Assembly (NCBI GenBank): GCA_020536535.1
Contig: JAHLWZ010000091.1
Coordinates: forward strand, 6,803-70,802
From: Pelomyxa schiedti
Lineage: Eukaryota; Protista; Evosea
Reading direction: 5' to 3'
Length of the DNA: 64,000 bases
Below, piece after piece: positions 11,146-22,660 of this stretch. How positions within the stretch are numbered: the stretch's first letter is position 1; every line of letters begins with the position of its first letter. The position numbers and the translations under genes were made by a program. The notes under the pieces were generated by a model, which had not been told where the DNA came from, did not search any database, and was given only the letters and a program-made list of their open reading frames with translations.

Positions 11146-11318
11146 CAACTATTTGTTTTCAGGAAGAAGTACAACGAAAAAGTCAGTCTCTTGATGATCT
11201 TGGTCACCCAACGCGTGCTGGTTGTTTTGTGTGGGTAGGGATGAGAGAACACTCTTTTCCAGGTTAGCTCACCTACGTCTTCAACACCCTCTCCAACAAA
11301 AAAAGTGGGTTGCGTGGT

Positions 11319-11684
11319 TGCGTCAAGCGTGGTCTGGTGGCTCAGCGAGCCATTCCCATTAAGTCAGTGCCTCCCGGCATCGCCCAGGCAGGGTCCTGTT
11401 TGACGAGGACTCCTGCTCAAGCGTGCAGCAGGCGGGATTGTTTGTTGGGGAGCCTCGGCTCGACTACCTGCCGGGTCGCAGGCTCCCCTAATGGGAACGG
11501 GATTGGTGGTCCCGTTACCCCGATGAAGCACTGGCAGGCCGAGTTTAGTACCCGGTGTCGCAGAACTTTGCGACAATGACAACCGTCATCGTGCCAGAGA
11601 CCCCAGCGGGGTAATGAGGCCCAATCGATGGAGATGGTGGTAGCCCCATCCTCGCAGTTGGGATCGGCGAAAAGACGCATTTTT
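11319..11684 (+). ncRNA. Unassigned structured RNA of about 365 nt, probable Pol III transcript
   Basis: Terminal helix TGCGTC/GACGCA followed by TTTTT; at least 9 internal stems with G-U wobbles on the + strand; A-box-like TGGCTCAGCGAG at 11338-11349; lies between divergent protein genes. Confidence 0.6.
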
Positions 11685-11976
11685 CGCAAAGGTCGTCGGA
11701 AGATTCCATTCAGTCGAATTGAAACAAATGTTTGAAGTAACGCTCGTGCTTTTTATGCACACAACCCGAAGTTTTCTCATCTTCTCCACTCTGATAAAAT
11801 CACTTTTCATCTCGTACATTTCATTATGGGATGGGTCTGGACCCGAGCAAACGGAAGCCCACGATTCAGACTGCTCATCGTTTAGTCGCGGTGTATACCG
11901 GCGCAACTTGCAAGTTCACCTCATCCACGTCTCTCAGAAATGGTTTCTGCCATCAATCCCTCGCTTTCTTCCAGAA

Positions 11977-20256: not shown

Positions 20257-22660
20257 TCATCGTGGGTCGAGGGATTGTTGGAGGGAGTCGATTCGTAGGT
20301 GGGTGTATTCTGTGATACTGATGATGTAGCCGAAGTTCTCTATCAGTGACACTTCAAAATCATCGGTGGAGAATCCCATGCATGCCTGGTGCATTTGGTC
20401 TGCCACCACAACAAGAGACCCAAGGTCTTTGAGAGTCTCAATACGGCTCATTAGTTTTCCGGTGGGCTTAGGGAGGTGTAAGGGAACGGTAGGGAGAGAA
20501 AAAAAGAGGTAGGTACCCACCATAAAGTAAGTATCCAAGAGATCATAAAATAAAGATGTATATTTGTCTCTCCATTTTGAGACTGAAAGAACACGTTTCG
20601 CAAGAACATTATCAGTAAACTTGTAAGGGTCGACCTGACTAAGATCCTAGACCGGTTTATTCCTTAAAAAAAAAAAAAAAAGAAGAAGAAGAAGATATAC
20701 CACAATAGGAAGGCCCATACTCATCGGAAAACCCCAGGAAAGGTCCAAGTCGTGACGCCAATATACAAATTGGCCATCGTCATTGAGGTAGAGGAATATA
20801 TTATTGCCTTGATTGGCAATCCCATCCCAGTTGGATGTCGCGACTTCCATAACGTACCTGGAAGCATCCCGTTAAAAAGTACTAGAAATGTTCAGTGAAT
20901 ACGCTTGAAGGAAAGCATTGACATCTAGTACCTGCGAAGTATATCAACTTACAATCAAATAACAAAAGTCATACTTTGGAGAGCTCGGATTCAAGCTTAT
21001 CATCAGGAGTTAAGTTGAGAACACTGATCAAATTTGCTAGTGCAGAATAATCGTTGGCTTGATCTGTCTGAGGGTCGTAGCAAGGATTTGGGTCACACCA
21101 GAGGTTCTGATATATTGTTGGATCTACTTAACATCAATGGCATACTTAACGGCATGATAAATAACCTGACCCCAGGTAGGAAAAATTGGCACCCCAATGT
21201 GTCTTATACACTGGCGTTTCATCACTACCCAGGCGGGATTTGAAAAATTGGTTATCCATATCCTTGTGTCAAGTTACAGCATGTGTTCCAAGATTTGGAG
21301 TAACAAACCTCGTACATGACATAGAGGCCCCAGCTTATGTCATTTATCCAAAGTTCGGCCCAACTACTGCGATAGACCTAAGAAAAACCATTAGGAAAAG
21401 TATATGGTTTATAAAGCATACAGGGCTATTCATGCTGTAAGAAATAGCTGCTGATGCCATTTCTCTAATGTAAGAAGGATCGAGAGCAGCTTTTTTCATT
21501 TGAGTAAATTCCAATAAGCTTGAACACGTAATCACCTGATTTGAATAAAAGGTGCTTTAACTGGTACCATCGCCTGTCAGGACTGAACTCCGTGAAGCTC
21601 AGCTTGAAACATTTCTTGGGGAAAAGCTTCATCAAAGATCTGTTCTTGGCAGAGGAGCTTAGTGGATTTCTTTTCAATTTTGGCACCTACCCTCCGAGTC
21701 GAATTCCAACATCAGTTAATGTGTCTTGAACAAGGCCATTATAAAACCACATGTCGGATTGCATGTACATGTCACTCTTGGAGTTTGCTGGGTCCAATAA
21801 TGCCCTCAAATCGTTGTCATTCATACTAATTCTAACCTGGGCAATAACTAATTTGATCAATTTGAGCATTTTTATCACATCTTGTACCTGATTCATTGAA
21901 AACAGGATGTTGGAGTCCATAGTCATCCCAATTGTCAAATCTATCTCCTGAAATAGTTTCAGATATCTCTGCCACAGTGACAACATCGGATGCACAAAAC
22001 TGTGAAGAATAAGAATCTATACGAGAATCTTCCGTCTTTTTACCTGTCCAGTGTACTCACTGCCGCAAACGCATGTATCCTGGCCCATCACTGTGGAACA
22101 TTTTCCTCTTCCCGAACAATAAGCACCAGTGCTGCAAGAGACAGCCGAACAAGAAGGTCCTTTCCAGCCAGGCTAAAAAAAACCAATGTAAAACAAAGTT
22201 GCCAAAGGGCATAAACACCAACCTGGCACGCACACCTCCATTGATCATTATATTCCGGACGTTGCTCACATTTGCCCCTACCACTGCAGGAATTAGGGCA
22301 TCCACAAGGTCCCACAGACCAAGTTCCCAATCGATCAACTTTGTACTTGCAGCTAGCAATGGGAAGAACGCCAATGGGACTTGTTGAGTATGTACACATG
22401 TTGTCAGCAATGGTGACATTGTTCAGCATACACAGTTGTCCCACAACCCCTGATGCCAGGAAAAAAAAAACAAAGGGGGGAAAACAGCACATAAGGGAAA
22501 CGCGAAACGGCAACATTTTCTTATGTACAAGAGAGGGCGAAACGTAAGTACCATACGGAGGCGGTATCGAACACAAAGGGTCCGTGCAAGTTTCGGCCCC
22601 ATACGACCAAACACTGCACACCACACACAATAGTAAGATCACTACCACCGTGCACCTCAT
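20257..22660 (-). CDS. Secreted protein with EGF-like repeats and a CotH kinase domain
   Basis: Signal MRCTVVVILLLCVVCSVWS; CPNSCSGRGKC and CSGRGKC..CVC EGF repeats; CotH motifs VGIRLGG, KKCFKLSF, DPSYIRE, NWDG..NQGNNIFLY, HDLDLSWG. Confidence 0.8.

What the first reader, a model, noticed from the sequence alone, without database searches (positions are those of the whole stretch)
11319..11684. Unassigned ~365-nt highly structured RNA with Pol III hallmarks between two divergent genes
Seen directly: the ends pair (TGCGTC..CG-TGGTCT with GGATCG-G-CG..GACGCA) and are followed by TTTTT. Internal stems are GGTGGCTC/GAGCCATT, CCCATTA/TAATG(A)GG, GTCAGTGC/GCACTGGC, GCAGG-GTCCT/AGGAC-CCTGC, GGGGAGCCT-CGGCTCG/CGGGTCG-AGGCTCCCC, AACGGGATT/GGTCCCGTT, TGTCGCAG/TTGCGACA, ATGAC/GTCAT, ACCCC/GGGGT and CCCAAT/GTTGGG. 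Together they form a nested fold with several multi-way junctions. Most non-Watson-Crick positions are G-U on the + strand and would be A-C on the minus strand, which points to selection on an RNA rather than a DNA palindrome. TGGCTCAGCGAG fits the Pol III A-box (TRGCNNARYNNG) about 20 nt from the 5' end, and GGCTCGACT is a weak B-box. I find no RNase P/MRP CR-I and CR-V pair, no snRNA signature and no canonical SRP helix 6/8 order. A CGCC-CAGG...AGCA-GGCG SRP54-like loop and a template-like CCATTCCCATT are present but equivocal. Inference: a very divergent known RNA (telomerase RNA, SRP, P/MRP, 7SK-like), a SINE, or a new class of amoebozoan large ncRNA.
Basis: partly seen in the sequence, partly recalled or inferred. 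Interest (0 to 1): 0.82.

Follow-up and report, generated by a model that had tools for sequence, protein, structure and literature searches.

The report
Abundant orphan structured RNA, opposite strand

Summary

**Gene model.** The RNA runs on the minus strand from about 11767 to about 11303, roughly 464 nt.
- All four genomic copies carry a Dictyostelium-type upstream element (CCCATAA) at exactly -63, an AT-rich box near -30, and a T7-T9 run at the 3' end.
- U3, SRP and MRP genes of this genome have the same motif upstream.
- An RNA contig from a library made with in-vitro poly(A) tailing ends ...CCCAUU+A24 at 11306. That fixes the strand and the 3' end.

**Structure.** The minus-strand fold has 134 pairs in 15 helices.
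- 96.8% of cells are paired across copies that are only 69% identical.
- 13 pairs show compensatory changes, against 4.4±1.6 in shuffles.

**Identity.** Rfam gives no hit at all. Canonical RNase P, RNase MRP, six SRP and eight U3 genes lie elsewhere in the genome. The genome has a TERT-like gene, but nothing positive links this RNA to telomerase.

**Best reading.** It is a Pol III-made scaffold RNA of a lineage-specific particle. The function is inferred, not shown.

The parts
11303..11767 (-). Mature RNA, about 464 nt: 5' GGGUUGUGUG... to ...CACGCAACCCA(C/U)U(U) 3'
   Evidence: RNA contigs cover 11306-11767 and nothing outside. One contig carries TT+A24 after 11306, from a library made with in-vitro poly(A) tailing. 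The conserved block in four copies has the same limits. z-score -5.97.
11824..11830 (-). DUSE-like upstream promoter element CCCATAA, starting at -63 from the first G of the RNA
   Evidence: At exactly -63 in all four copies while the spacer differs. The same motif lies at -60/-61 of U3 genes and upstream of SRP and MRP genes. DUSE sits about 60 nt upstream of Dictyostelium ncRNA genes (PMC7919456).
11793..11799 (-). AT-rich TATA-like box (TTTTATC), -32 to -26
   Evidence: All four copies have a T/A-rich box at this position in otherwise unlike spacers. Its function is inferred.
11298..11304 (-). Oligo-T terminator (T7 here, T6-T9 in the other copies). The RNA ends inside it.
   Evidence: The RNA contig ends CCCA+UU and then the added A-tail. 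P, MRP, SRP and U3 genes of this genome end in T5-T12.
11758..11767 (-). H1 5' strand (GGGUUGUGUG), pairs with 11307-11316. A 10-bp terminal stem that includes a U-G pair, which would be C-A on the plus strand.
   Evidence: Invariant in all copies.
11307..11316 (-). H1 3' strand (CACGCAACCC)
11740..11749 (-). H2 5' strand, pairs with 11320-11330. One compensatory pair and one G-U to A-U change.
11711..11739 (-). Fast-evolving, mostly unpaired linker. It differs even among the 93-96% identical copies and is 10 nt shorter in the divergent paralog.
11688..11710 (-). Conserved mostly unpaired segment containing the invariant GACGACCUUU
11667..11687 (-). H4 hairpin (GCGAAAA / UUUUCGC) with conserved loop GCGUC. 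The loop could pair with GACGC at 11320-11324, which is untested.
11616..11664 (-). H5 and H6 hairpins, the least well-defined part. H6 has a large loop with conserved UCGAUU.
11518..11611 (-). Four-way-junction domain. Long stem H7 carries three hairpins: H8 and H9 (invariant, loops included) and H10 (covarying).
   Evidence: Compensatory changes at columns 171/237 in two paralogs and at 217/225.
11497..11515 (-). H11 hairpin (ACGGGA / UCCCGU), one compensatory pair
11354..11496 (-). Three-way-junction domain closed by H12 (UCCCAUUA / UAAUGGGA). It holds H13 (loop AGGUA), the invariant unpaired CAAACAAUCCC (within 11434-11446), the 25-pair hairpin H14 and the junction strand ACUGACU.
   Evidence: There are 8 compensatory pairs in H12-H14. 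The soil relative X10 adds C-G to A-U at columns 296/309.
11338..11352 (-). H15 hairpin (UGGCUC / GAGCCA).

Best explanation
This is one of four genes of Pelomyxa schiedti for an orphan structured RNA of about 464 nt, encoded on the minus strand (about 11767 to about 11303).

**Shown or strongly supported.**
- RNA polymerase III most likely transcribes it from an external snRNA-type promoter: a DUSE-like CCCATAA at -63 plus an AT-rich box near -30.
- Transcription stops in a T7-T9 run, leaving a short U tail.
- The RNA closes on itself through two terminal stems, H1 and H2.
- It carries a variable linker, a conserved single-stranded GACGACCUUU next to hairpin H4, a four-way-junction domain with two invariant hairpins, and a three-way-junction domain with an invariant unpaired CAAACAAUCCC.
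- Two sequence types that are 69% identical keep the same fold through compensatory changes, and both are seen as RNA.

**Inferred.**
- The RNA is the stable scaffold of an abundant, lineage-specific ribonucleoprotein, in the manner of 7SK, Y, vault or telomerase RNAs.
- Its invariant unpaired motifs and invariant hairpin loops are the binding platforms.
- A La/LARP-type protein holds the U tail beside the terminal stem.
For: **Copies.** There are four dispersed copies with unrelated flanks. A covariance model finds no others.

**Promoter and terminator on the minus strand.**
- CCCATAA lies at exactly -63 in 4 of 4 copies.
- There is a T/A box near -30 and a T6-T9 run at the end.
- U3, SRP and MRP genes have the same motif at similar spacing. 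Published DUSE spacing is about 60 nt.
- The minus strand has no internal T5 or longer. The plus strand has two.

**Strand and 3' end.** Contig X1 record 1 reads ...CCCA-TT-A24. The 2023 P. schiedti single-cell libraries used poly(A) polymerase tailing before oligo-dT priming.

**Extent.** RNA contigs cover only 11306-11767.

**Structure.**
- RNAalifold gives -159.8 kcal/mol (minus) against -146.1 (plus). G-U:A-C in shared helices is 9:2 against 2:9.
- 134 pairs are 96.8% paired, with 13 compensatory pairs against 4.4±1.6 in shuffles (0 of 500) and 0-5 in slid controls.
- z-score is -5.97.
- Paired columns differ at 23% and unpaired columns at 41% between the two types.

**Expression.**
- Single contigs reach k-mer depth 600-1400 in X3. 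Letters specific to the C424 and C1095 copies appear in RNA loose ends.
- Nineteen runs from ten studies hold at least part of it. Twelve of those runs are on record as RNA, among them soil, sediment and lake metatranscriptomes. The wastewater rows are only guessed to be RNA.

**Not a known family.** No Rfam hit at E up to 10. Canonical RNase MRP, RNase P, six SRP and eight U3 genes lie elsewhere.
Against: - The function is not shown. No protein partner, localisation or target is known.
- Abundance rests on contig depths that cannot be compared with other genes.
- Strand evidence from RNA is a single poly(A)-bearing contig. That run X1 belongs to the published tailed libraries is inferred from its metadata.
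- All covariation comes from four paralogs of one genome plus one partial environmental contig. No homologue from another named species could be obtained, and the metagenome scan gave only a chance hit.
- DUSE serves both Pol II and Pol III in Dictyostelium, so Pol III rests on the T-run and the U-ended RNA.
- H5 and H6 and the variable linker are poorly defined.
Confidence: 0.6

Rival explanations
1. It is the telomerase RNA of Pelomyxa or the Archamoebae. Pol III would make it, as in ciliates and plants. The C/A-rich unpaired CAACAAACAAUCCC would be the template, H13 the template boundary, H12 the core-closing helix, and the four-way junction the stem-terminus element.
For: - The genome has Telomerase_RBD matches above the cut-off on C931, so a telomerase RNA should exist.
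- None is known in Amoebozoa.
- The gene has a snRNA-type promoter and a U tail.
- An invariant C/A-rich single strand sits directly 3' of a helix inside a helix-closed domain.
Against: - There are four expressed gene copies, including a 69%-identical paralog that differs at the 5' edge of the putative template. Telomerase RNA genes are normally single-copy.
- Contig depth is very high and the RNA appears in environmental RNA runs.
- No 1.5-repeat template is present in a conserved unpaired stretch.
- Neither strand has a template of 8 nt or more for TTAGGG.
- No pseudoknot is supported.
- The telomere repeat could not be found. TTAGGG and AATGGG arrays are short and internal, and 40 sampled contig ends carry no tandem repeat.
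- Another scan note flags a different 297-nt DUSE-driven RNA as telomerase-like (untested).
Confidence: 0.06
2. One reading: a plus-strand Pol III RNA of about 365 nt (11319-11684) with internal A and B boxes that ends at TTTTT.
For: - The plus strand also folds well, with z-score -4.7.
- It has many G-U pairs in its own predicted structure.
- T5 follows a helix at 11680-84.
Against: - RNA contigs run through the T5 to 11767.
- Conservation extends about 15 nt upstream and about 85 nt downstream of the claimed ends.
- The poly(A)-tailed contig gives the minus strand.
- DUSE, the T/A box and T7-T9 are arranged for the minus strand in 4 of 4 copies. No DUSE lies upstream on the plus strand.
- The consensus fold energy and the covariation term are worse on the plus strand: +6 against -3.3.
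- The terminal stem has C-A on the plus strand and U-G on the minus strand.
Confidence: 0.04
3. It is a highly divergent member of a known family (RNase P/MRP, SRP, U3, 7SK or a spliceosomal snRNA), possibly a functional analogue of 7SK that sequesters a transcription factor.
For: - It shares gene type and size class with MRP (493 nt here) and 7SK: external promoter, U tail, and 5' and 3' ends paired.
- The 7SK-like reading is only an analogy.
Against: - No Rfam family, 7SK and telomerase models included, gives any hit at E up to 10 on either strand.
- Canonical MRP, P, SRP and U3 genes exist elsewhere.
- The P4-like pairing is refuted by covariation.
- There are no C/D or H/ACA boxes.
- Conserved motifs show no complementarity above chance to MRP, P, SRP, U3 or to the rDNA stretch tested.
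Confidence: 0.1
4. It is a repeat, SINE or decaying duplicate without a function of its own, or a DNA-level palindrome.
For: It is multi-copy with unrelated flanks. An A-run abuts one end on the plus strand.
Against: - All copies keep an untranscribed promoter at fixed spacing. Retroposition would not copy that.
- The A-run is the terminator on the other strand.
- There are only four copies.
- Compensatory substitutions maintain 96.8% pairing at 69% identity.
- The RNA is expressed strongly.
Confidence: 0.03

Closest known systems
DUSE-driven ncRNA genes of Dictyostelia (snRNAs, SRP RNA, Class I RNAs; Hinas & Soderbom; Kjellin et al. 2021, PMC7919456)
   Same: It has an upstream CCCA(T/C)AA element about 60 nt before the start, a run of T after the gene, paired 5' and 3' ends, several gene copies and high expression.
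   Different: Class I RNAs are 42-65 nt with an 11-nt motif. This RNA is about 464 nt with 15 helices and shares no sequence with them. The host is an archamoeba, where the authors did not expect DUSE to be conserved.
7SK RNA (Rfam RF00100, RF01052)
   Same: It is an abundant Pol III RNA from an external snRNA-type promoter. It is several hundred nt long with a multi-hairpin scaffold, paired 5' and 3' ends, and a U tail.
   Different: There is no Rfam hit. No GAUC-repeat hairpin or 3'-terminal hairpin sits next to the U tail, and the tail directly follows the terminal stem. 7SK and HEXIM are known only from animals (own knowledge).
Telomerase RNA of ciliates and plants (Pol III, type-3 promoter)
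   Same: It has the same promoter and terminator type and a closing helix. A C/A-rich single strand lies 3' of a helix, and there is a separate junction domain. TERT is present in the genome.
   Different: It has four copies in two sequence types, no recognisable 1.5-repeat template and no supported pseudoknot, and it is very abundant.
RNase MRP / RNase P RNA
   Same: Size, terminal stem and Pol III gene type are similar.
   Different: Canonical MRP (81 bits) and P (91 bits) genes are elsewhere. There are no CR-I/CR-V motifs. The P4-like helix is replaced by a covarying nested helix.

Membership tests
Nuclear RNase P / RNase MRP RNA | Match to RF00009 / RF00030 (CR-I, CR-V, P4 pseudoknot) | tested here: not met
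   No hit at E up to 10 on either strand. The genome's own P (C676, 91 bits) and MRP (C811, 81 bits) genes are elsewhere. The candidate P4 pairing loses to a helix with compensatory changes.
SRP (7SL) RNA | Alu domain and helix 8 motifs, match to RF01856 / RF00017 | tested here: not met
   No hit. Six canonical SRP RNA genes at 69-75 bits lie elsewhere.
U3 snoRNA | Boxes A'/A, B, C, C', D; match to RF00012 | tested here: not met
   No hit. Eight canonical 197-nt U3 genes lie elsewhere. The only U3-like stretch lies in the fastest-evolving linker.
Telomerase RNA | Unpaired template complementary to about 1.5 telomere repeats | tested here: inconclusive
   The telomere repeat was not found. There is no TTAGGG template of 8 nt or more, and no conserved unpaired 1.5-repeat.
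Telomerase RNA | Template-adjacent pseudoknot and association with TERT | not testable with these tools
   No pseudoknot is supported by covariation. A TERT RBD is present in the genome. Binding needs an experiment.
7SK RNA | Match to RF00100 / RF01052; 5' hairpin with paired GAUC repeats; 3' hairpin followed by the U tail | tested here: not met
   No Rfam hit. The U tail follows the terminal stem H1 directly. HEXIM presence was not testable.
SINE / retroposed Pol III element | Internal promoter, 3' A-rich tail on the RNA strand, target-site duplications, many copies | tested here: not met
   The promoter is external and kept at -63 in every copy. The RNA strand ends in U. There are only four copies.
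Amoebozoan DUSE-type ncRNA gene (gene architecture, not an RNA family) | CCCA(T/C)AA about 60 nt upstream of the start | tested here: met
   At -63 in 4 of 4 copies. U3 has it at -60/-61, and SRP and MRP carry it too. The literature spacing is about 60 nt.
Pol III transcript | Oligo-T terminator with the RNA ending in U; no internal long T-run | tested here: met
   T6-T9 follows every copy. The RNA contig ends CCCA-UU before the added A-tail. The longest internal T-run on this strand is T4. Polymerase identity itself was not tested.

The most novel reading that the evidence does not exclude
The RNA is the core of a so far unknown, abundant ribonucleoprotein of anaerobic amoebae: a new class of large Pol III scaffold or catalytic RNA on a par with 7SK, vault or Y RNAs. 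Less likely, it is the long-sought telomerase RNA of Amoebozoa.
Probability: 0.4. Interest if true: 0.8.

Novelty: new variant of a known kind. Interest (0 to 1): 0.62.

Why it matters
- **New large RNA family.** Large, abundant, well-folded RNAs outside the classic set (rRNA, SRP, P/MRP, snRNAs, 7SK, telomerase) are rare in eukaryotes. Each one found so far has marked a distinct cellular machine.
- **Ready for experiments.** This family has a firm gene model, two covarying sequence types and defined conserved single-stranded motifs. Pull-down, localisation and knock-down can start from this.
- **Promoter evolution.** The Dictyostelium upstream element at about -60 also operates in Archamoebae. 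That pushes this promoter type back towards the amoebozoan ancestor and gives a simple handle for finding further ncRNA genes.
- **Method.** G-U counting on a self-predicted fold does not decide the strand. Gene architecture and RNA ends do.

Tried and rejected
- **Rfam.** Tried three ways: a 5-kb stretch at E up to 1, a 421-nt stretch at E up to 10, and the whole window at gathering score. Nothing was found.
- **P4-type pseudoknot.**
- **Template idea.** For CCATTCCCATT, (AATGGG)n occurs at about 20 loci, but all lie inside contigs in coding-like low-complexity sequence. The motif is also on the non-RNA strand.
- **(TTAGGG)4.** Only two short internal sites were found.
- **Metagenome pattern scan** for two conserved motifs gave one AT-rich chance match with no further similarity.
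- **Covariance model R1** of the central 165 positions found no further paralogs in the genome.
- **tRNA-like element** in the four-way junction: ARAGORN found nothing.
- **Guide-RNA idea.** Conserved unpaired motifs show no complementarity beyond shuffles to MRP, P, SRP or U3, or to 5.8S-ITS2-28S and 18S 3' end-ITS1. The 5' two-thirds of 18S and the 5' ETS were not available.
- **Telomere hunt.** Forty sampled contig ends gave no tandem repeat.
A HEXIM search was not possible.
- **Neighbouring ORFs** have no Pfam domain.

Full report
**What is in the sequence.**
- The stretch 11319-11684 folds far better than shuffled sequence on both strands: z-score -4.7 on plus and -6.0 on minus.
- Rfam 15 gives no match on either strand, even at E up to 10 on a 421-nt query, and none at gathering score in the whole window.
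- The genome holds four copies. They lie in this window (C91), on C424 (96% identical over the full unit), on C791 (93%) and on C1095 (69%).
- A covariance model of the central 165 positions finds only these four.

**The unit is longer than reported.**
- Alignments of the copies with their flanks show the conserved block starting right after an A-run at about 11304. It runs to about 11773, and the flanks beyond are unrelated.
- RNA contigs from two single-cell transcriptome runs of one sample (X1, X3), one wastewater run and one soil run cover 11306-11767 and nothing on either side. One contig (X1 record 2, 11436-11767) runs straight through the TTTTT at 11680-84.
- That T5 is only T4 in the C1095 copy.

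**Organism and libraries.**
- The assembly (52,367,397 bases in 5337 contigs) matches the published Pelomyxa schiedti single-cell assembly of 52.4 Mb in 5337 scaffolds (PMC8887013).
- The 2023 follow-up study made single-cell transcriptomes with a modified SmartSeq2 protocol. Transcripts were polyadenylated in vitro with poly(A) polymerase and rRNA adenylation was blocked (PMC10579272).
- Runs X1-X4 are 2023 single-cell protist transcriptomes with Nextera adaptor remnants. That they are these libraries is an inference from metadata.

**Strand.** Five lines of evidence point to the minus strand.
1. Contig X1 record 1 reads, in RNA sense...CGCAACCCA-UU-A24 at window position 11306. The genome has a T-run there, not an A-run, so the A24 is a tail added to an RNA 3' end. 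This fixes both the strand and the end, inside the terminator.
2. On the minus strand every copy has CCCATAA starting at exactly -63 from the first G of the conserved block, and a T/A-rich box at about -32 to -26 in an otherwise unlike spacer. T6-T9 follows directly after the block.
3. The same CCCATAA lies at -60/-61 of two U3 genes and upstream of three SRP genes and the MRP gene. The P, MRP, SRP and U3 genes all end in T5-T12. This is the Dictyostelium upstream sequence element, described about 60 nt upstream of ncRNA genes and used by Pol II and Pol III (PMC7919456).
4. The minus strand has no internal T-run longer than T4, whereas the plus strand has two T5.
5. The consensus fold is better on the minus strand.
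   - RNAalifold gives -159.8 against -146.1 kcal/mol, and the covariation term is -3.3 against +6.
   - The terminal stem has a U-G pair where the plus strand would have C-A.
   - Helix H2, with one compensatory pair, forms cleanly only on the minus strand.

Each strand's own prediction contains 59 G-U cells. In the 92 pairs shared by both predictions, G-U:A-C is 9:2 on the minus strand and 2:9 on the plus strand.

**Structure.**
- The minus-strand model has 134 pairs in 15 helices (window coordinates).
- Across the four copies 96.8% of cells form standard pairs. Thirteen pairs have changes on both sides, against 4.4±1.6 in column shuffles (0 of 500 reach it) and 0-5 when partners are slid by 1-3 columns.
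- Between the main type and C1095, paired columns differ at 23% and unpaired columns at 41%.
- The single-sequence MFE of the full RNA (-195.4 kcal/mol, z-score -5.97) reproduces nearly the same fold.
- Layout, 5' to 3':
  - a 10-bp terminal stem H1;
  - stem H2;
  - a fast-evolving linker;
  - an invariant unpaired GACGACCUUU;
  - two less certain hairpins, H5 and H6;
  - a four-way junction, with long stem H7 carrying H8 and H9 (invariant including their loops) and H10 (covarying);
  - hairpin H11;
  - a three-way junction closed by H12, with H13, the invariant unpaired CAAACAAUCCC, the 25-pair H14 and the junction strand ACUGACU;
  - hairpin H15;
  - the 3' strands of H2 and H1, then the U tail.
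Its 3' strand pairs instead with UGCCAG, with compensatory changes in both C791 and C1095.
- The soil contig X10, 90-95% alike over 184 nt, adds a further C-G to A-U exchange in H13 (mapped).

**Expression.**
- In X3, single contigs reach k-mer depths of 600-1400. Letters specific to the C424 and C1095 copies appear in RNA loose ends, so both sequence types are seen as RNA.
- At 11455 the window copy has T, which breaks a pair in H13. About 90-100% of the RNA depth carries G, as in the other three copies, so this particular copy contributes little RNA or carries a recent or erroneous change.
- Nineteen runs from ten studies hold at least part of the sequence, and twelve of them are on record as RNA.
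- Contig depths cannot be ranked against other genes, so 'very abundant' is a reasonable inference, not a measurement.

**What it is not.**
- The genome has a canonical RNase MRP RNA (C811, 493 nt, 81 bits) and RNase P RNA (C676, 91 bits). It also has six SRP RNAs (69-75 bits) and eight U3 genes (42-44 bits).
- ARAGORN finds no tRNA-like gene.
- It is not a SINE, because the untranscribed promoter is retained at fixed distance in every copy and there are only four copies.
- Conserved unpaired motifs show no complementarity beyond shuffled controls to MRP, P, SRP or U3, or to 5.8S-ITS2-28S and the 18S 3' end with ITS1.

**Telomerase RNA?**
- In favour:
  - The genome has Telomerase_RBD matches above threshold on C931.
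  - No telomerase RNA is known from Amoebozoa.
  - The gene type equals that of ciliate and plant telomerase RNAs.
  - A C/A-rich invariant single strand lies just 3' of a helix in a closed domain.
- Against:
  - There are four gene copies in two expressed sequence types that differ at the edge of that strand.
  - Apparent abundance is high.
  - No conserved unpaired 1.5-repeat is present.
  - No TTAGGG template is present, and no pseudoknot is supported.
- I could not find the telomere repeat.
- I put this reading at about 6%.

**Most likely mechanism.**
- Shown or strongly supported: an external-promoter, Pol III-type gene family; an RNA of about 464 nt with paired ends and a short U tail; a fold conserved by compensatory change; high expression.
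- Inferred: the RNA is the stable scaffold of a lineage-specific particle, its invariant unpaired motifs and invariant hairpins are binding sites, and a La-type protein sits on the U tail next to H1.

**Earlier scan notes.**
- Note s1-383119 describes what is evidently another copy of this family. It reaches the same open verdict of 'made in bulk, no known kind'. It is not independent evidence.
- Other notes report the DUSE-like element at -63 elsewhere in this genome. I confirmed that here for U3, SRP, MRP and this family.

Noticed in passing
G000 loci L020 (MRP), L023-L025 (SRP), L029-L030 (U3); window 11824-11830: The Dictyostelium-type upstream element CCCATAA sits about 60 nt upstream of U3, and also upstream of SRP and MRP genes of this archamoeba. 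The published work did not expect it to be conserved outside Dictyostelia.
   Followed up: partly
window 11455: The window's own copy has T where the other three copies and 90-100% of the RNA depth have G. The T breaks a G-C pair in helix H13, so this copy is either weakly expressed or carries a recent or erroneous change.
   Followed up: partly
G000:C811:110023-110515 (L020): The RNase MRP RNA of this genome is unusually long at 493 nt (81 bits to RF00030).
   Followed up: no
G000:C931:32777-33290 (L027, L028): Two Telomerase_RBD matches lie above the Pfam cut-off. One has in-frame stops, which could mean an intron or a break. They suggest a TERT gene in Pelomyxa, although Entamoeba is reported to lack telomerase.
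   Followed up: no
G000:C544 (22,562 nt; L039-L042): The rDNA contig carries two 5.8S genes in opposite orientation, at 127-260 on plus and 20822-20955 on minus. The two rDNA units point towards each other, so this is either a palindromic arrangement or an assembly artefact.
   Followed up: no
G000 C222:29616-29687, C821:84471-84524 and about 18 other loci (L012-L019): (AATGGG)n hexamer arrays of 3-13 units lie inside contigs, embedded in low-complexity, coding-like sequence. They are not telomeric.
   Followed up: yes
G000:C1298:7124-7147 and C1866:2659-2682 (L006, L007): There are two isolated interstitial (TTAGGG)4-5 blocks in unique sequence. No terminal TTAGGG arrays were seen.
   Followed up: partly
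G000:C16 right end (L078): This 291-kb contig ends in a run of at least 49 T. It could be an amplification or assembly artefact, or a genuine homopolymer.
   Followed up: no
window 11711-11739 (minus strand): A linker of about 29 nt differs at many positions even between copies that are otherwise 93-96% identical, and it is 10 nt shorter in the divergent paralog. It may be an unconstrained spacer or a copy-specific specificity region.
   Followed up: partly
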